The notes beneath the pieces are model-generated. The model was not told the origin of the DNA. It saw only the letters and a program-made list of their open reading frames with translations, and did not search any database. From Podarcis filfolensis (lineage: Eukaryota), in assembly GCA_964270895.1 (NCBI GenBank), contig OZ185436.1: a DNA stretch of 64,000 nt. The stretch is one strand, 5' to 3'. This document shows positions 3,415 through 57,230 of the stretch, piece by piece. Position 1 is the stretch's first letter. Each line of letters starts with the position of its first letter. Made by a program: the position numbers and the translations under genes.

Positions 3415-3960
3415 GGTTGCACATGTCCTGGTAACATCTAGACTGGATAATGTACTCTGCGTGCATGGAAAATGTCAACTTGTTCAGAATGCAGCTGCTT
3501 GGGTGCTTGTTGGAGCTAAGCACTTGTAATACACAACCTCTATAGTATGCCAGTTGTGATGGCTATGATTTCATCTCCAGGTCCAACTTAAGGTGTTGGT
3601 ATTGACATCTAAAGCTATAAATAGTTAGTGACCAGGCTATTTGAAGGATTGCCTGCAGCCATATGAACTTGCCTAGTCTTTAAGATCAGCTCCAGAGTCC
3701 TGCTTGAGAGTCCACCATCAGTGCTCATCATATTGGCAGGCACTAGTGACAGGACCTTTTTGGTGGTGGCTCCATGTCTGTGGGACATCCTCTCAAGGAG
3801 TTCACATATGACTGCGTTTTAATTAGGTGTTTTTCTCCTTCATTTTTATTAGTTTTTAAACAGACTTTGAAACTTTTAAATCTTAATCTTCTTTTTATTA
3901 AGAGTACTGTGACTATATACAGCTTTTGCTGCTGCTGCTGTTAGTTTAGTATTTATTTAT
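3415..3960 (+). mobile_element. Degraded L2 LINE 3' fragment
   Basis: Remnants of SRLD..., QLVQNAAA..LL, FKVL.LT.KA and RTFLVVAP.LW motifs typical of L2 ORF2. Confidence 0.65.
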
Positions 3961-4539
3961 TTATTTGTATATGCCCTGAAGAGTGGCATGTAAATACTGC
4001 AAATGAACAAGGATATGCACTATCACCAACCATTATTTAAGTATTCATGCCTCCCACCCGTGCACACATGCTGATATCTCACACAGGTACATTAACTTGG
4101 TGGCTAATGTGTAAATGTATCTGGGTTTTTTTAAAACTTTTACAACAGAAAGCAAAGGAGTGGAAGTCTGTCCCAGATTGGAACAGCAGCAGGGGACAGT
4201 TTTAGAAACCCCTTTCTCTCATCATGCTATTGTCCTGTCAAAAATCTACCCCAAGCTGCTATTTACCCCGATTTAAAAAACAAAAGGGCTTGCCCCTGCC
4301 TCCCCCCTATTTTCCGCCATTGTACAACAATTGCTTTGATGCTCTATGGCTTGACACGCTTCTAGGCAAGGGAAAAGCAGTAGCCATCAATGTTTCTCTA
4401 AGACTGTATACATTACTGGCTTAAAATGCTTCTAGGTTCTTCTTTTCCCCAATTCAGATCAAAGAAATGCACTGGATGCAGAATAAACAGTAGTATGTAC
4501 ACAGCCTTCTTTGCTGTTGGGGTGGGGGATAGTTCTCAA

Positions 4540-51000: not shown

Positions 51001-52750
51001 CAAAGAAAGTATGAGCGAAGTCTCTGGCTGCCCAAAGAGGGTGCACTGTGATTGCTGTGTCTGCACTAACTAACCCCTAGCCCCAATGCTCTTCATTGCC
51101 TGGAGGGTGGTACCCAAAATGGCAATTTCAGAGAATTTCCCCTAATCATAGTAAGCCATAATTTGAGCCCAATGCCTACTGCTAAATGTAGCCATGGTCA
51201 TAGCCCATGAAAGAAAGTGCTGCTCCCAAAGCACATTTTCTTGATGGGCTTATTTTAAGTAACCAGATGTGGCCTTCCAGCTGTCACTGGACTCCAACTC
51301 ACATCAGCCTCAGTCAGAGATGATGGGAGATGAAGCCCAACATCTGGAGGGCCATAGTTTAGCCACCCTTGTACTAAAAACAGATGTGAAAAACTTTGCG
51401 CTTAAATAGATTTGTGTGGTCTTAACAATCAGAATCTGATAAGCATACAGGAATCAATCTGTCTGACATTAACCTGGAAGTAACTGCAAGGGTGGCTGAG
51501 TTTTGGTCAACAGTATCTCTTAGAGTGGTGAATGGCACTATTTAGTGGGAAGAAATCCCATTTTTATATAGTTTACATGGCTATTTATTTGTATATATTT
51601 TAAATTTTATATATCAATGTTTTATACTTGTAATGCCTAATAATGGTTTGGTGAAGTATTAAGATTCCAGTTGCTGTAGGACGTCCCATACTCATCCACT
51701 CATCTTTTTCCCTCTTAACAAGTCCTTGCTAACACACATATACTTAGTGATAATTTCTTCTCCTGATTTCCTTCCTGCAGTCCTTGGATGGAGCACCTAC
51801 TGTGTTCCCTGACCACAATCTGCTGCTGGCTCTTCTGTGATCTTTCTGTTCTTCTCACCCAGGCATTCCTAGTTACACCTTACAGGCTCACAGAACCACC
51901 AAGTAGATTCCTGATGTGCCAGGTTGATCTAGCATAACATCACATAAAGCTATATCCAACCAAAAGAAAAGTAGGAAACACTTCTTTGACAGCAACAGCG
52001 AATTACGATGTGCTCCATTGGGTATCTCATACTGTAGACAAAGGAGTCTGCTGTCTTGACAGGCAGTAATCATTGATGTGCAAGATGTTTTATAACATTT
52101 AAAGTTGTAGGGTGGCTTGGGGTGCACGGCGTAGTCAAGTTGTAGATCTGCTCTTGATGAGCCTTTTTTGTTTGCAAACAGAAATGCCTGCAAATGCCAA
52201 AGAGGACCGCCCTTGCCTTCAGAAGGTGCCTCAGATAACAGTGTCTTCGGGGACCTCCGGCACTTCCTCGCTACTGAAGACATCTGCTTCATTTGAGCAA
52301 GGCCCCTCAGGTCAGCTGTCCTTTGAACACTGCCCTAGCAGCAACGACAGTCATCTGGAAATCTTGTTAAATTCCCACAGCCCTCTGGGGCGGTCGAGTG
52401 AAATCACCCTACTGAAAGTGGGTGAAGAACCACACTTTGAAGGGGTGATGGAAGGATTTTCCAACAAAGCTACCGATGAACTGCTCACACCCCACGAGAT
52501 CCTGCCCACTCCCCTGTCGCCCATGGAGACCCAGCTGTCTCCCTCTTCTGGAGAAGGAACTGGTTTGCACATGAGCTTCACAGAGTCTCCTTGGGAAACA
52601 ATGGAATGGCTGGACCTCACTCCGCCTAGCTCAGCCAACGGTTTCGGTTCCCTCACCACCACTGGGCCCAGCATCTTCAACATTGATTTCTTAGATGTTA
52701 GTGATCTCAACTTGAACAGTACCATGGACCTGCATTTACAACAGTGGTGA
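16099..52750 (+). CDS. MYOCD: Myocardin, complete spliced CDS (13 exons, 2820 nt, 939 aa)
   Basis: Exon lengths 55+66+56+76+162+176+126+257+154+951+114+58+569 give one open frame from MTLLGSEHS to MDLHLQQW*. All introns are GT-AG. N- and C-termini and domain order match myocardin rather than MRTF-A/B, and MAP2K4 is the neighbour. Confidence 0.98.
19444..19785 (-). mobile_element. Sauria SINE (intron 1), extreme 5' end missing
   Basis: Reverse-complement copy of the 29088 element family; starts with an aaaggtaaagg tail. Confidence 0.9.
20847..21101 (+). mobile_element. Same Tigger-like MITE with an extra subterminal repeat unit (intron 1)
   Basis: TIRs, TA flanks, three tandem GTATGTAACC units. 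Confidence 0.88.
23933..24254 (-). mobile_element. Same hAT MITE family, inverted, with an internal duplication of about 60 bp (intron 1)
   Basis: Reverse-complement similarity to 49393-49641; 8-bp TSD CTTTACAA at 23925-23932 and 24255-24262. Confidence 0.85.
25174..25301. other. Assembly gap (128 N) in MYOCD intron 1
   Basis: Run of N; true length unknown. Confidence 0.99.
27053..27093. repeat. (GT)20, about 275 bp upstream of exon 2
   Basis: Read directly. Confidence 0.97.
27367..27432 (+). CDS. MYOCD: MYOCD exon 2 (66 nt, RPEL1: VLQLRLQQRRSREQLANQGIMP)
   Basis: Acceptor tctctcccag, donor CAC|GTGAGT; phase 1-1. Confidence 0.97.
27925..28130. mobile_element. MIR-like core SINE remnant (intron 2)
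   Basis: attttttgcagatggggaaactgagactgagagag...cttgcccaaggccacccagtgagt. Confidence 0.6.
29088..29448 (+). mobile_element. Sauria SINE, full length, young (MYOCD intron 2)
   Basis: tRNA-related head GGGACGCGGGTGGCGCTGTGG with B box GGTTCGAATCC; (ACCTTT)n tail; perfect 13-bp TSD TACATCCCGTTTG at 29075-29087 and 29449-29461; CpGs retained. Confidence 0.93.
33724..33779 (+). CDS. MYOCD: MYOCD exon 3 (56 nt, PLKNPSPFHEQKKSLERAK)
   Basis: Acceptor ttctgattgcag, donor AAG|GTAACC; frame continuous with exons 2 and 4. Confidence 0.95.
35784..35980 (-). mobile_element. CR1 3' end fragment (intron 3)
   Basis: ggaagggaccgtgagggtcatctagtccaacccc tail motif followed by a degenerate CR1-like block. Confidence 0.55.
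36099..36174 (+). CDS. MYOCD: MYOCD exon 4 (76 nt, RPEL2: TEDYLKHKTRNRPERSELVDMHILQ; contains Met80)
   Basis: Acceptor ttatgttctgtag, donor CAGG|GTAAGA; ATG at 36159-36161 corresponds to the internal start of the smooth-muscle isoform. Confidence 0.95.
36649..36759. mobile_element. Old short DNA-transposon-derived repeat (aactacaactccca / tgggaattgtagtcc family)
   Basis: Related degenerate copies at about 6620-6736, 8480-8610, 41545-41643, 42900-43010 and 51250-51370. Confidence 0.45.
37571..37912 (-). mobile_element. Sauria SINE (intron 4), 5'-truncated
   Basis: taaaggtaaaggtaaag tail and shared core ggtacctatttatctacttgcac. Confidence 0.9.
38123..38284 (+). CDS. MYOCD: MYOCD exon 5 (162 nt, RPEL3: QMKLKRARLADNLNEKIALRPGPLELVEKNII)
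   Basis: Acceptor ggctttacag, donor AAG|GTAATA; lies inside ORF 37990-38385. Confidence 0.97.
40381..40556 (+). CDS. MYOCD: MYOCD exon 6 (176 nt)
   Basis: Acceptor tttttcttccttcctgccgcag, donor CAG|GTAAAA; encodes FSKSSDAFAFDEDSSNDGLSPEQ. Confidence 0.96.
41914..42039 (+). CDS. MYOCD: MYOCD exon 7 (126 nt, divergent linker DHSRGSENN...TSAK)
   Basis: Acceptor ttttaattccag, donor AAG|GTATGA; phase 0-0, open frame, expected size. Confidence 0.9.
43692..43804 (-). mobile_element. tRNA-Ile-derived SINE with CR1-type tail, internally deleted (POM-like)
   Basis: Minus strand TAGCTCAGCTGGTTAGAGCATGGTGCTGATAATGCCAAGGTCGC joined to GGGGGTTGGACTAGATGATCCTCAGGGTCCCTTCCAACTCTGATTCTATGA. Confidence 0.65.
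44112..44370. mobile_element. Tc2/pogo-type MITE with an internal 35-bp hairpin (intron 7)
   Basis: TIR CCATATTTTTTGCTCTATAAGAC / GTCTTATAGAGCGAAAAATACGG with TA flanks. Confidence 0.8.
44738..44994 (+). CDS. MYOCD: MYOCD exon 8 (257 nt; basic SRF-binding and Q-rich domains)
   Basis: SKPSSDSKNRHKKPKEMKPKVKKLKYHQYIPPDQKAEKSPPPMDSAYARLLQQQQLFLQLQIL; acceptor cgtttag, donor GAA|GTGAGT. Confidence 0.98.
45220..46270 (+). mobile_element. 5'-truncated LINE: ORF2 C-terminal region with Cys/His motif and 3'UTR (intron 8); clade uncertain
   Basis: ORFs 45239-45811 (IFQAKVSSQLLFGTPIW...YAELG) and 45853-46122 (RHCRC...DTVEHILFYCPLY) are broken by a frameshift and stop; ends TAATGCCTAATAAAGGTTTGG. Confidence 0.75.
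46350..46503 (+). CDS. MYOCD: MYOCD exon 9 (154 nt; ends at the start of SAP, LPSNLDDLK)
   Basis: Acceptor ttttattttttatag, donor AAA|GTGAGT; phase 2-0. Confidence 0.96.
47300..47430. mobile_element. Short hAT-like MITE (intron 9)
   Basis: Ends CAGTGCTATTTTTC...GAAAAATAAGCCCTG; degenerate 8-bp TSD ggtgtagg/ggtgcaga. Confidence 0.6.
47455..47656 (+). mobile_element. L1-like 3' end with AATAAA and A-tail (intron 9)
   Basis: GGGAGG...GGGGAAGTC followed by a T-rich tract, then aaaatcaataaaaatttataaaaaaaaa. Confidence 0.5.
47950..48900 (+). CDS. MYOCD: MYOCD exon 10 (951 nt; SAP domain, leucine zipper)
   Basis: [30 protein letters not shown] ... KDKMLVEKQKVINELTWKLQQEQRQVEELRMQL; acceptor ttcattccag, donor CCA|GTAAGA. 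Confidence 0.98.
49393..49641 (+). mobile_element. hAT-type MITE (intron 10)
   Basis: Ends CATGGGTAGGCAAAC...GCTCACCCCTG; 8-bp TSD CCCTAAGC at 49385-49392 and 49642-49649. Confidence 0.85.
49953..50066 (+). CDS. MYOCD: MYOCD exon 11 (114 nt; QPPPYADAVKQ)
   Basis: Acceptor ttccatacag, donor CAG|GTAACA; homologous to human QPPSYEDAVKQ. Confidence 0.92.
50905..50962 (+). CDS. MYOCD: MYOCD exon 12 (58 nt; QMTRSQQMDELLDVLIETG)
   Basis: Acceptor ttcttgctgcag, donor GAG|GTAGGT; near-identical to the mammalian peptide. Confidence 0.97.
51455..51660 (+). mobile_element. 3' end of the same LINE family (intron 12)
   Basis: Clear similarity to 46065-46270 (tctgtctgacattaac...ggcactatttag...gaagaaatccca...cttgtaatgcctaata). 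Confidence 0.8.
52182..52750 (+). CDS. MYOCD: MYOCD exon 13 coding part (transactivation domain)
   Basis: Acceptor tttgcaaacag; ends SPWETMEWLDLTPP...FNIDFLDVSDLNLNSTMDLHLQQW-TGA. Confidence 0.98.
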
Positions 52751-53469
52751 ACAGAATAAGCCTTATGTGTGGGGATGCAGTTAAACACAAACAGATTTCC
52801 ATTAAAGAGACTCAGATACTTTATCAGAGAGCTCTGGTGACAGCCAGGGAGAAGAAACTGGAGTCAGTTTTCCCAGGACATTCCCCTCCCCTATTATAAA
52901 TGAAATTGCCAGATAATCTCCCACACACCACAAAGCAAATCTCTGGCGCAGGAGTCTCCTCCTCAGCAAGCACAGCTAACTTTAGTAGCTTCCAAGAAAG
53001 ACTCACTCTGCAGCAGAATTCTGTTTGGTATGCACATCCATTTCATCCCTAACATATCTATCATCCGGATCAGGTTCTGTTATATTGTCTCTTATTACCT
53101 ACTGTGGAAAAAAATCTGGTTCACTTACAGCTTCCAACACACTGCATGGCAGCCACTGCCTTTCCTCCTGATTATATACATGAAGACTTTTTTTAAAAGT
53201 CAGCTCACGAAGAAGCCATTGTCATACCAGTAACCTCCAAGCCATCCTTTCACTAAACACTTCTCTCTCTCTGCCCTGTCTTACCAATTTTAAAGTCACT
53301 TGAAATAGAAGTAAAGCAATCTGACTTGTTTATGTGGTGGGCACTCAGCTTGGAAAGAACGCAGAGTAATATAAAAAGCAAGTACATAAATGAAGGATTT
53401 TTAATTGACTAGAAGTTTGGGGTGACTTCTATCAATTTTCTGTTTCAGGGTACATTCCTCCCTTCATAA

Positions 53470-53800: not shown

Positions 53801-54472
53801 AGAGCCGATCTGAAAAAGTGACAGTTTAATCAGCATAACAAGTGAAGGTTGCAAATCTACGACTAAGTCTACGACGGTGGAAGAAACTGGGCAACTTACC
53901 CCTTGTAGCCTGAACCTATGGCCTTTGTCTGTCTTTAAATTAAGATATTGCACAGGGCAGACCCCAAAAAGGAGGCTGCCAGGTTTTCATCTAGGGCAAG
54001 GTCAGGCTAGCTGGTACAAGGCAGGACCATAGCAGGCCCAGCTACACAGCAACCATTTCCCAGCCCATGGGCTTCATAGCAAGCACCAGATACTCATTAT
54101 GTTCCTAACCATCGCTTTCTTGAGGGCAGACAAGAATATTGCAATGTATCACTCAAATATGTCGCCTCATTAAAAGAAGATGCAAATGCTGCCAGCCTGG
54201 TAGGGTTCCTTTGTTCACATGTGGGTAGGCTTCACCCAGGTGATGACTCCACAGCTACATATAAAAAACAAAGTCTGGGTTATGAGCAAAGCACTATGTT
54301 GTGAGATATCTACCCTTTATTCGTTTTAACCATAGTTCTCTCTTTATACCACAAAGTGAGGGCCCAGCCCTCAGCCACAATTCCAAACTATACTCAGATC
54401 CACTTGAGCAACAGATCCTCACTACACTGCTGAATGTCCACAGTAACAACTGAATGTTATAATTTACCTATA

Positions 54473-54702
54473 CAGTGGTACCTCTAGATACGAACAGGAT
54501 CCGTTCCGCAGCCCCGTTTGCATCTAGAAGCAAACGTAACTAGTGACGGCACGTCTGCGCATGCACGTCGCTTTTTGCCGCTTCTGCGCATGATGTCATT
54601 TTGAGTGTCTGCGCAAGTGGCAAAACCTGGAAGTAACGCACTCCGTTACTTCCGGGTTGCCGCGGAGTGCAACTCGAATGCGCTCAACCCGAGGTATGAC
54701 TG
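54473..54702. mobile_element. Related Tigger-like MITE with a different CpG-rich interior, inside the MYOCD 3'UTR
   Basis: Ends CAGTGGTACCTC...GAGGTATGACTG with TA flanks. Confidence 0.8.
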
Positions 54703-57230
54703 TAAATTATTATTAGTAATTTCCTTAATGCCCAGTGAGCTTACTGTTTGTTTTCTTGCACATACCTTCTTATCTTTCATTCTAGCAAGTTCAAAACCCT
54801 TTACATTCCCCTCAGTTTTACTTTTGCCAGTAGACCAAATGCTGAGTGGTTGGGCCTAGGAAGCAGATAGTTGACTGGGGGCTAAATCTTGAGTCTAGTT
54901 ATGTGACAAAAGAAATGTAGAAGCAAAAGTCTAAACGGCACTTAAAATGTATCCTACTTGGCTCAAAGCTAGGTGGTAGTTTAAAACAAATTACACTACT
55001 GTATCTACAGTGATGGAAAGCGTATTTTAACTAAACCGGTCCCTATATGTCAGGATTTATTATTATTTTTAAAAAACAAAATAACTTCTGCTTCCTGTTG
55101 CAACCAAATCTGAAAATGGCAGCTGTTGTCAAAGGTGCATCATGCTTCAAAATACTAGTTAAGCAGGTGAATAAGCCTTTAAAATAATAGTCTGCTATGA
55201 TGTTTATGGCCCTTGAGTGAAACTTTGCTTGAACTATACCGGTGCTGTAAATTAATACAGCTTAAGCAGGTGGTGAGACATATGTTGAAAGGGGAGGGCA
55301 GGTACTTATATAGGTACTTCCAAATTGGCAACTCTTAGTTGTGCACAATCATTACTCTCCAGAAAGTCTTCTCCACACAGAAAAACTTTCCACACTCAGA
55401 GTTGAGGATATAGTACTTGTTTTATGTGTAATCCACACCACTAGACATGACATAGGCATGAAAGTGGGAAAGGGACCATTCTGAACGAGCCAAATTAATT
55501 CTTTAATTTACAACAAACCACTTTTTAAAGTTCTATTATATGGTTTACTTTTATGGCTTCTTAAAAAAGACAGCACTTTTTAAATTAAGATAATGGTAAG
55601 AAAACAACAATTTTTAAAGCAATTTCAATTCTTAAAATTTGAGTTAAATTGTTTTTCATGTAAGTACAATTGTGTGATTATTTCAATTCTAATAGGCAAA
55701 AATGTTCTAGCACAAATAAAAAGATGCTTTGAAGTCATACTTACAAAATTGTGTAAATGGAAAAACTAATAAGGATGGTGTGCTGAAGTAGATGACTACC
55801 AACAGGTTCACCTGCCCAGTATGTCAGAGTGTACATAAAATCCACACAAAAAGGACAGAATAGTACTATAGTGATCTACAGCTATGGGGATCGTACTGTT
55901 GTTCTCTTTTAAAAATGGTATGAAGAGACAGAAGGAAAAACAGGATAATAATTTGATGACATCATGCTGATGTCCGACAGAAAGCGTGAAGCATTCAGCC
56001 ATAAACACCTAGCATGGAAGCATGCAGCATCACAAAGCACATTCTACTACAGCAGAATGGCACCTCAGAACAGAAAGACAATAGCACTCAACTGAACCAA
56101 ACAGATACCTTGCAATGCACACAATACCAGTGTGAAGAATCTCCTTACAAAATAAACCTCTACTGTCTCCTTCACATGGTGCTGCACCTCTTTCAAGACA
56201 TCCTTTCCTTCAACACACCTATCTGTGATCTACGCTACACAAGCAGCAATCTCACTGATGTCATATTCAACCTTTTAATTGCCTAAGGCTTGTGAAAAGA
56301 AGCTCCCATTTACAGTATTGTGACACAGAACTAACTGCACAGGATGCTCAAGTCCACAATATCTTCGTGCCTTAGCCATTGCTTTTTTCTGGATTTCCTG
56401 CCCAGCCTCACCTGTAGTGCAGGGAGCAGAGTGAAAATCCCATGCAAGGTCTTCCAGAGAACGGCTATGAATCCACATCCAAAGAGGAGGAGCTTGTTCT
56501 TCTTGGCTAGCCGGGTACTTTGCAGTATTGGCCAATTCATCAGTGTTTTTATTTCTTCTGTAAACCTCTGTGCACTGCAATTCAGAAAGGTCGCACAGTA
56601 TGGAAGGGCATGTGTAAGAAACAGTTTGTGGCTGCTTTGGACGGATCTGGCCATTTCCTGAAACTGTGTAAAAGTATTGCAAACCAAAGCTAACTACAAA
56701 ACTATTTACCAAATGAGTGTATTTAATATTGTGTTACTGGAAGGAGTTGTTGGAAATCAAGACAGTACAAAAAGGACCACGTGCCCTCGTGTGTCTTCTT
56801 GGCTGAAGAACAGCCTGGACCGGGAGAGCTGTCTCTGCAGACCTCAATATGTGTAGAACTCCAGCCTCACTAGGGTGACTAAACTTCTGAGGTCAAGTAG
56901 GGGAAGAACGAACAACTGGTTTTAATATTGCTGCATGTTGTATAAAAAAATGTTAAGTTTTTTTTATAAAGTCACTATTTAAAGCATGAATTTTCTATTG
57001 TACAAATGTTCACACAGTGCACTGGTAGGATAGAACAATCCTTCACATGCTTGTTTTCTTTTACTTAATTTTAATATGCAAAAAGTTAGAAGTCATTCCA
57101 TTGAGGCTTTTTAATAGCACTTGAATACAGACTAGTTTTAGGTGCTACACTGCCATGCGGTACAGGGCTTTTTATCCTTATTTAAAGGGATGCTGTCAAC
57201 TATATATATATATTAAAAAACCACACTGTA

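What the first reader, a model, noticed from the sequence alone, without database searches (positions are those of the whole stretch)
52844..52888. 3'UTR hairpin in which a miR-145 site is masked by a built-in copy of miR-145
Seen, about 100 nt after the stop: AAACTGGA (52855-52862) is complementary to miR-145-5p nt 2-9, with extra pairing GGGA (52847-52850) to nt 10-13. Directly after a 4-nt loop, CAGTTTTCCCAGGA (52865-52878) is identical to miR-145 nt 4-17 (GUCCAGUUUUCCCAGGAAUCCCU, from memory) and continues CATTCCCCT, resembling the miRNA 3' end. The two arms fold on each other, and a miR-1 seed site begins at the stem base (52878-52884). Known: myocardin-SRF drives miR-143/145, and miR-145 was reported to raise rather than repress a mouse Myocd 3'UTR reporter. 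Inference: a strand-displacement switch in which miR-145 opens the stem and changes UTR structure or miR-1 access. Part of the identity is forced by the stem, and coincidence is not excluded.
Basis: partly seen in the sequence, partly recalled or inferred. Interest (0 to 1): 0.7.

Follow-up and report, generated by a model that had tools for sequence, protein, structure and literature searches.

The report
Conserved miR-145 site in reptile/bird MYOCD
About 100 bases after the stop codon of a lizard's myocardin gene lies a strong microRNA-145 binding site shared by lizards, snakes-like relatives and birds but lost in the mammals sampled; the eye-catching hairpin with a 14-base 'copy' of the microRNA is largely peculiar to this lizard lineage and is not a conserved structure.

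Summary
The element is real biology. It sits in a ~45-nt conservation island about 100 nt after the MYOCD stop codon, found in all 8 sauropsid lineages sampled (4 squamates, 4 bird-like) inside an otherwise diverged UTR.

The invariant core is AAACTGGAGTCA-(0-2 nt)-TTTT(T)CCC(C)AG. This is a miR-145-5p 7mer-m8 site with extra pairing to nt 10/11-13 and 15-16, followed by a conserved pyrimidine tract.

The proposed masking hairpin does not hold up as a conserved structure:
- Its key base (G52867) is G/A/T/C or absent elsewhere.
- The sense identity to miR-145 is 14 nt here but 6-9 nt elsewhere.
- The stem has pair probability 0.03-0.43 in context.
- Stability z-scores average about -0.8.
- RNAalifold finds no covariation.
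- The predicted partner of the seed match differs between squamates and birds.
- The miR-1 site is lineage-specific.

In a ruminant and a rodent-like mammal the orthologous block reads AAACAGGAGTC, with the seed broken. The mouse reporter result therefore cannot act through this element.

A second miR-145 site (56736-56742) is conserved down to fish-like sequences.

Verdict: a new lineage-restricted member of a known kind, a conserved miRNA site in a known target. The conserved downstream flank remains unexplained.

The parts
52748..52750 (+). MYOCD stop codon (…MDLHLQQW*), start of the 3'UTR
   Evidence: the last-exon protein finds myocardin fragments
52831..52837 (+). GCTCTGG, invariant in the 4 squamates.
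   Evidence: alignment A1; MFE structures. L003 has CCAGAG, turning a U·G pair into U-A.
52844..52850 (+). CCAGGGA: pairs with miR-145 nt 15-16 and 10-13, with an A·A mismatch at nt 14. It also carries a CCAG that can pair with the seed match CUGG.
   Evidence: CCAGGG is conserved in 6 of 8 sauropsids
52851..52854 (+). GAAG: purine spacer that bulges out of the miRNA duplex. It is present in squamates and absent in birds, where complementarity to nt 2-13 is contiguous or nearly so.
52855..52862 (+). AAACTGGA: miR-145-5p match to nt 2-9 (the 7mer-m8 is 52856-52862). AACTGGA is invariant in 8 of 8 sauropsid lineages at +93 to +110 after the stop.
52863..52866 (+). GTCA: conserved spacer (TTCA in one squamate), also kept in the mammalian block
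52867..52867 (+). G that completes the apical stem and extends the miR-145 identity. It is variable (G/A/T/C) in squamates and absent in birds.
52868..52876 (+). TTTTCCCAG: conserved pyrimidine tract plus CAG, identical to miR-145 nt 7-15. Tract lengths vary elsewhere (U4-6, C3-4).
52865..52878 (+). The 14-nt sense identity to miR-145 nt 4-17. This full length is seen only in this lineage; two close relatives showed no differences listed within 52844-52888.
52878..52884 (+). ACATTCC: miR-1/206 7mer-m8 match, not conserved in any other sampled lineage
   Evidence: The published mouse miR-1 site has a different context (PMC3777988).
56736..56742 (+). Distal miR-145 7mer-A1 site ACTGGAA in the block GTATTTAATATTGTGTTACTGGAAGGA, conserved in a squamate, birds and fish-like sequences

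Best explanation
The finding lies in a conserved regulatory island of the sauropsid MYOCD 3'UTR. Its core is a high-affinity miR-145-5p target site: a seed match to nt 2-8/9, plus supplementary pairing of an upstream CCAGGG to nt 11-13 and 15-16. In one bird-like sequence the complementarity runs unbroken over nt 2-13 and in the others nearly so. Myocardin/SRF is known to drive miR-143/145 (established knowledge; PMC6395947). The most likely working is therefore a feedback loop in which miR-145-loaded Argonaute binds MYOCD mRNA here and at a second, more deeply conserved distal site (56736-56742). The conserved downstream tract GTCA-(N)-UUUUCCCAG is a flanking determinant of that site, either a protein-docking pyrimidine tract or a weak local partner (CCAG) of the seed-match CUGG. 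The extension to a 14-nt copy and a neat hairpin arises from a lineage-specific G (52867) and GGA, not from a conserved design. Shown: the sequence matches, the conservation, the absence in sampled mammals, and the lack of a conserved stable helix. Inferred: that miR-145 actually binds here, the direction of the effect, and the role of the flank.
For: AACTGGA is invariant at +93 to +110 in 8 of 8 sauropsid lineages, while mean UTR column identity is 0.52. The 15-nt window 52852-52866 scores 0.89, as high as the coding end. The lineages span a lizard-to-passerine-like range; P0009 is 96% identical to a Lonchura myocardin fragment. Predicted miR-145:site duplexes are -17.8 to -26.0 kcal/mol in 7 of 8 species and -12.9 in L003, against -4.4 to -14.4 for the local hairpins. 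One bird-like site, CCAGGGAAAACTGGA, complements nt 2-13 and 15-16. A second miR-145 site is conserved from squamates and birds to fish-like sequences, and birds carry a third at about +310. This makes MYOCD a multiply and anciently targeted gene. Literature: miR-145 acts on a Myocd 3'UTR reporter (PMC4882986, PMC6395947). Against a conserved hairpin.
Against: There is no direct evidence of binding, and no expression data. Two RNA runs of a close relative gave no MYOCD UTR coverage. The island is partly shared with mammals as CCAG…AACAAACAGGAGTC, without a miR-145 seed match. Some of the conservation could therefore serve another factor. The plain-site model does not by itself explain why the 3' flank, which does not touch the miRNA, is so well kept. 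It also does not explain why the seed is predicted to be poorly accessible in 7 of 8 species. The taxa of the Logan contigs are inferred, not labelled. Turtles, crocodilians and amphibians were not identified among the sequences.
Confidence: 0.6

Rival explanations
1. Masked site or strand-displacement switch. The seed match CUGG is held by a flanking miR-145-like CCAG motif: the downstream UUUUCCCAG or the upstream (U)CCAGGG. miR-145 must invade, perhaps using CCAGGG as a toehold, and this changes local structure.
For: Both flanking CCAG motifs and the central CUGG are kept in nearly all sauropsids. The central C-U-G of the seed match is predicted paired at over 0.9 in most species. Seed 7-mer accessibility is in the 6th-18th percentile of each species' own UTR in 7 of 8. 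Under this model both arms are pinned by the invariant miRNA, so absence of covariation is expected. In L001 a 5' A-to-G change coincides with an extra C in the 3' tract. A similar copy-plus-site arrangement flanks the bird-only site.
Against: No common helix exists. The partner is downstream in squamates (0.76-0.95) and upstream in birds (0.54-1.0), and L005 is mostly open. Core z-scores run from -2.3 to +0.9, mean about -0.8. RNAalifold gives 4 invariant pairs at -3.6 kcal/mol with no covariation. G52867 is not conserved. L006 has lost the U-run. U and C run lengths vary, even between L001 and L002. The species are not independent samples, because the core is shared.
Confidence: 0.13
2. The downstream pyrimidine tract is a docking site for an RNA-binding protein (U-rich or C-rich binders of the RBM38, PTB, PCBP or hnRNP K kind). 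That protein gates or assists Argonaute at the adjacent site. The likeness to miR-145 nt 7-15 is coincidence.
For: The tract tolerates length changes (U4-6, C3-4) but keeps its pyrimidine composition and the CAG. That pattern fits a protein motif better than an exact copy or a fixed helix. RBM38 is documented to bind uridine-rich regions next to miRNA sites and block access (PMC3221330). In this lizard the tract is followed by a further C-rich run, CCCCTCCCC.
Against: No specific motif was tested, and no protein data exist. No Pumilio element or AUUUA lies within 100 nt in most species. The rough chance of a 9-nt identity to the neighbouring site's own miRNA is about 1e-3 to 1e-2 (my estimate), so calling it coincidence carries a cost.
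Confidence: 0.2
3. The island is conserved for a reason unrelated to miR-145. One option is an amniote-wide protein-binding block, CCAG…AAAC[T/A]GGAGTCA. Another is a cryptic 3' splice acceptor, TTTTCCCAG|G. In either case the seed match in sauropsids is incidental.
For: The mammalian orthologous blocks keep CCAG…AACAAACAGGAGTC(A) although the seed is broken. TTTTCCCAG|G or |C matches the pyrimidine-tract-plus-CAG acceptor consensus (what the sequence shows).
Against: The chance that a 25-nt block carries the 7-mer of exactly the miRNA tied to myocardin is about 0.1% (my estimate). The further CCAGGG complementarity makes it less likely still. The mammalian UTRs are alignable throughout this region, so their block is not specially conserved. 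No RNA evidence for splicing was obtained. Rodent-like sequence has no acceptor-like tract.
Confidence: 0.07

Closest known systems
Conserved canonical miRNA target sites with 3'-supplementary pairing (TargetScan-type 7mer-m8 sites). Specifically, the reported action of miR-145 on the Myocd 3'UTR (Cordes et al. 2009, Nature 460:705, as cited in PMC4882986 and PMC6395947).
   Same: A seed match to nt 2-8 in a 3'UTR, more than 15 nt past the stop, evolutionarily conserved, in a gene already tied to miR-145 in a myocardin/SRF to miR-143/145 loop.
   Different: This proximal site is present in squamates and birds but broken (T to A in the seed) in the ruminant and rodent-like sequences sampled. 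It is therefore not the site behind the mouse reporter result. Its extra pairing is to nt 10/11-13 and 15-16 rather than the classic nt 13-16. The Cordes paper itself was not available to read.
Structure-gated miRNA sites: the Pumilio-induced switch in the p27 3'UTR controlling miR-221/222 access (Kedde et al. 2010, from memory; discussed in PMC3794589 and PMC8728526), and RBM38 blocking of miRNA access via U-rich flanks (PMC3221330).
   Same: A miRNA site whose seed match is predicted to be base-paired with nearby UTR sequence, next to a conserved U-rich tract. It could work in the same way.
   Different: No Pumilio element lies nearby. There is no stable or conserved helix. No protein partner is known. 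Here the occluding sequence resembles the miRNA itself, which follows trivially from complementarity to the site.
TDMD (target-directed miRNA degradation) trigger sites such as CYRANO:miR-7 (from memory)
   Same: A seed match plus a central bulge (GAAG in squamates) plus further 3' pairing, with conservation extending beyond the paired region.
   Different: miR-145 nt 17-23 find no complement upstream in any species. Pairing stops at nt 16 with a mismatch at nt 14. The defining extensive 3'-end pairing is missing.
mir-145 precursor hairpin (Rfam mir-145 family)
   Same: Contains a miR-145-like strand opposite a complementary strand.
   Different: No Rfam miRNA-family match at this place even at E up to 10. 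The stem is about 11 bp, far too short for Drosha or Dicer. The arm order is reversed, with the antisense-like arm 5' and the sense-like arm 3'.

Membership tests
Canonical conserved miRNA target site (miR-145-5p) | Perfect match to miRNA nt 2-8 (7mer-m8) within a 3'UTR, at least 15 nt after the stop | tested here: met
   AACTGGA at 52856-52862, +106 after the stop. It is the only 7mer-m8 in the ~4.5-kb UTR.
Canonical conserved miRNA target site (miR-145-5p) | Seed match preserved in orthologous position across distant species | tested here: met
   8 of 8 sauropsid lineages at +93 to +110. Not met in 3 mammalian and 2 fish-like sequences.
Canonical conserved miRNA target site (miR-145-5p) | The miRNA exists and is co-expressed with the target in this organism | not tested
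   The miR-145 locus is not in this window. Its presence in lizards and birds is from memory of miRBase. RNA runs gave no MYOCD coverage.
Canonical conserved miRNA target site (miR-145-5p) | Seed-dependent change of expression | not testable with these tools
   Needs reporter or CLIP experiments.
The seed core is predicted paired in most species.
   RNAalifold gives 4 invariant pairs and 0 compensatory changes. The partner of the seed differs between clades. G52867 is variable or absent.
   No UGUAHAUA within ±100 nt in any of the 8 species.
TDMD trigger site | Extensive pairing to the miRNA 3' end (about nt 13-22) in addition to the seed | tested here: not met
   Pairing ends at nt 16 with a mismatch at nt 14. 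No complement to nt 17-23 upstream.
miRNA precursor (mir-145 family) | Match to the family covariance model; a hairpin of about 22 bp or more | tested here: not met
   No miRNA-family hit at 52800-52900 at E up to 10. The stem is about 11 bp.

The most novel reading that the evidence does not exclude
The conserved CCAG…CUGG…CCAG arrangement is an autoinhibitory, bistable module. The seed match of a near-perfect miR-145 site is always held by one of two built-in miR-145-like segments: upstream (U)CCAGGG, resembling nt 2-6, or downstream UUUUCCCAG, identical to nt 7-15. miR-145 gains access by toehold-mediated strand displacement. Response of MYOCD to its own downstream miRNA would then be thresholded. 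The same design would recur at the bird-only site (CCAGUUUU…AACUGGA).
Probability: 0.1. Interest if true: 0.65.

Novelty: new member of a known kind. Interest (0 to 1): 0.3.

Why it matters
Myocardin is the master co-activator of smooth-muscle and cardiac genes, and miR-143/145 is its best-known downstream miRNA cluster. Three points follow from this work.

First, reptiles and birds carry an extra, very strong miR-145 site close to the stop codon. In the sampled mammals that site is broken by a single base. The strength or wiring of the myocardin-miR-145 feedback may therefore differ between sauropsids and mammals.

Second, it cautions against carrying the mouse reporter result over to this element.

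Third, the conserved flank is a compact, testable case of sequence next to a miRNA site being under selection. The likely payoff, however, is incremental rather than a new mechanism.

Tried and rejected
1. Rejected: variable G52867, low pair probabilities in context, no covariation.
2. The miR-1 site as part of the module. Rejected: absent in all 7 other sauropsid lineages. The published mouse miR-1 site has a different context.
3. A link to the mouse Myocd reporter. Rejected for this element: rodent-like L019/L020 read AAACAGGAGTCAGC, and there is no ACTGGA in the first 336 nt of that UTR.
4. A pre-miRNA or miR-145-derived insertion. No Rfam hit. The resemblance to the miRNA 3' end (CATTCCCCT) is window-lineage only.
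5. A TDMD trigger. No 3'-end pairing.
6. A second conserved miRNA seed match in GAGTCATTTTCCCAG. None recognised among broadly conserved families. This was checked from memory only, not against miRBase.
7. RNA evidence. Read laying on two RNA runs of a close relative gave no coverage of the MYOCD UTR, only a repeat at about 54456-54765. This is uninformative, not negative.
8. More orthologues. The metagenome scan returned only a contig already held and one fish-like contig. The P0016 (Myotis) look-up found no record.
9. The Cordes et al. 2009 paper (PMC2769203) is not held. Its claims are taken from citing papers.
10. Handling notes. Clusters P0015 and P0020 looked primate or human-like by their C-terminus and were deliberately not fetched or compared. 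No contig taken for human was used. Only the last coding exon was searched, by reference.

Full report
**1. What is in the sequence**

The window carries the last coding exon of a lizard myocardin gene. Species class comes from earlier scan notes s1-329732 and s1-329769. The exon ends …MDLHLQQW with the stop at 52748-52750.

- AAACTGGA (52855-52862) is the reverse complement of miR-145-5p nt 2-9.
- GGGA (52847-52850) complements nt 10-13.
- CAGTTTTCCCAGGA (52865-52878) equals nt 4-17.
- ACATTCC (52878-52884) is a miR-1 7mer-m8 match.

The miR-145 string used is found verbatim in 205 papers. The 14-mer occurs once in 64 kb, where 0.05 matches are expected even with one mismatch allowed. The plain seed 7-mer occurs at chance frequency in the window: 17 found against 13 ± 3 expected.

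**2. Does it fold?**

Excised alone (52843-52880), the two arms pair at -12.3 kcal/mol. In 150-450-nt contexts the apical pairs have probability 0.29-0.43 and the basal pairs 0.02-0.17.

The 56-nt stretch is no more stable than dinucleotide shuffles (z -0.60). The 36-nt core reaches z -1.7.

Two competitors exist. One is the downstream CCCCTCCCC tract. The other is an upstream GCTCTGG (52831-52837), invariant in squamates, which pairs with CCAGGG.

**3. Relatives**

I searched with the last exon by reference and fetched the contigs that encode the fragment proteins. The sequences obtained were:
- Three further squamate-tier lineages: L001/2, L003/4 and L005, at 86-91% protein identity.
- Four bird-tier lineages: L006, L007, L008/9 and L010/11. 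P0009 is 96% identical to a Lonchura fragment.
- A ruminant, L012/13, identified by a Bov-type SINE in its UTR (from memory).
- A rodent-like mammal, L019/20.
- A more distant mammal, L014.
- Two fish-like sequences, L015/16 and L018.

Clusters whose C-terminus looked primate or human-like (P0015, P0020) were not fetched. No contig taken for human was used.

**4. Conservation**

The sauropsid UTRs are otherwise largely diverged, with mean column identity 0.52. Within them stands a ~45-nt island: CCAGGG-(1-11 mostly purine nt)-AACTGGAGTCA-(0-2)-TTTT(T)CCC(C)AG. The 15-nt window 52852-52866 scores 0.89, on a par with the end of the coding sequence.

AACTGGA is invariant and always sits 93-110 nt after the stop.

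In birds the purine spacer is missing. One site, CCAGGGAAAACTGGA (L006), complements miR-145 nt 2-13 and 15-16. The others differ by a wobble or a mismatch at nt 10, and L010 also loses pairing at nt 12-13.

Predicted miR-145:site duplexes are -17.8 to -26.0 kcal/mol in 7 of 8 species and -12.9 in L003.

Two close relatives of the window species show differences at 52781, 52897 and 52935, and none listed within the element.

**5. What is not conserved**

- G52867 pairs with C52858 and lengthens the identity to miR-145. It is A, T or C in the other squamates and absent in birds.
- The longest sense identity downstream of the seed is 14 nt here and 6-9 nt in the seven other lineages.
- U- and C-run lengths vary, even between L001 and L002. 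L006 has replaced the U-run by a duplicated CTGGAGT.
- The resemblance to the miRNA 3' end (CATTCCCCT) exists only in this lineage.
- The miR-1 match also exists only in this lineage. The validated mouse miR-1 site has another context (PMC3777988).

**6. Structure across species**

RNAalifold returns only CUGG (seed match) paired with CCAG (downstream). That is four invariant pairs at -3.6 kcal/mol with no covariation.

Pair-probability bookkeeping gives the following:
- The seed-match CUGG pairs downstream in three squamates (0.76-0.95).
- It is mostly open in L005.
- It pairs with the upstream UCCAG in birds (0.54-1.0).

Core z-scores range from -2.3 to +0.9.

The seed 7-mer is nevertheless predicted poorly accessible, in the 6th-18th percentile of its own UTR, in 7 of 8 species. 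These species share the core sequence, so they do not count as independent observations.

**7. Mammals and the mouse reporter**

The island is orthologous in mammals (alignment A4). The rodent-like sequence reads CCAACCAGAACAAACAGGAGTCAGCTATT. The ruminant reads CCAGAAAGAACAAACAGGAGTCTTTTTTTT. The seed match is broken by a T-to-A change and the CCCAG is gone.

No ACTGGA occurs in the first 336 nt of the rodent-like UTR. Citing papers confirm that miR-145 raised a Myocd 3'UTR reporter (PMC4882986, PMC6395947). That effect cannot run through this element. The primary paper was not available.

**8. Further miR-145 sites**

A distal 7mer-A1 site at 56736-56742 lies in the block GTATTTAATATTGTGTTACTGGAAGGA. 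It is conserved in a squamate, in three birds and in both fish-like sequences.

Birds have a third site at about +310. It is flanked by a CC[A/T/G]GTTTT segment and an AAAACTG.

MYOCD is thus an ancient, multiply targeted miR-145 gene. The proximal site is a sauropsid-restricted addition, or a mammalian loss. No outgroup was available to decide which.

**9. Interpretation**

The best-supported reading (0.6) is a functional, high-affinity miR-145 site closing a myocardin to miR-145 to myocardin loop. The neat hairpin and the 14-nt copy are lineage-specific embellishments of a conserved pyrimidine tract.

The conservation of that tract is the one feature not explained by a plain site. Candidate explanations are:
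- a protein-docking site of the RBM38, PTB or PCBP kind (PMC3221330), at 0.2;
- intramolecular occlusion, the generalised masking model, at 0.13;
- a function unrelated to miR-145, including a cryptic splice acceptor, at 0.07.

The masking model survives in weakened form only. It lacks a common helix, thermodynamic signal and covariation.

**10. Limits**

- No expression or binding data were obtained. The RNA runs were uninformative.
- Taxa of the Logan contigs are inferred.
- The check for a second miRNA seed in the flank was from memory only.
- Only the last exon was searched, by reference. No joined spliced model was used.

Noticed in passing
window 56736-56742 (block about 56715-56750): A second miR-145 site (7mer-A1, ACTGGAA) in a block conserved in squamate L001, birds L006/L007/L010 and fish-like L015/L018. 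It is probably the vertebrate-wide miR-145 site of MYOCD.
   Followed up: partly
L006 about 1990-2060, L007 about 4015-4085, L010 about 3830-3900: A bird-only extra AACTGGA site at about +310. It is preceded about 22 nt upstream by CC[A/T/G]GTTTT (like miR-145 nt 3-10) and followed by AAAACTG. The upstream variants keep pairing to the seed match via G·U wobbles.
   Followed up: partly
window 53923-54068, minus strand: A SCARNA16-like match at 61.5 bits (gathering score 65), E 2.6e-11. It lies inside the MYOCD 3'UTR but on the opposite (MAP2K4) strand. No counterpart was found in the other squamate, bird or mammal loci searched.
   Followed up: partly
window about 54456-54765: A highly repeated element. 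Summed contig depth is 2e4-3e5 in two relatives' DNA runs, and it is the only part of the UTR where RNA reads landed. Probably an interspersed repeat.
   Followed up: no
window 52831-52849: A squamate-conserved small hairpin, GCTCTGG-N4-6-CCAG[G/A]G. L003's G-to-A change turns a U·G pair into U-A. It would sequester the segment that pairs with the miR-145 3' region.
   Followed up: partly
window 52801-52806: An ATTAAA poly(A)-signal-like hexamer only about 50 nt after the stop, upstream of the miR-145 site. If used, it would give a UTR isoform lacking all the sites.
   Followed up: no
runs X7-X10, X14, X15, X19, X20: Very small libraries (70-160 million letters) of related species still hold this stretch as contigs. 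This suggests the region is a target of a sequence-capture probe set rather than shotgun or RNA data.
   Followed up: no
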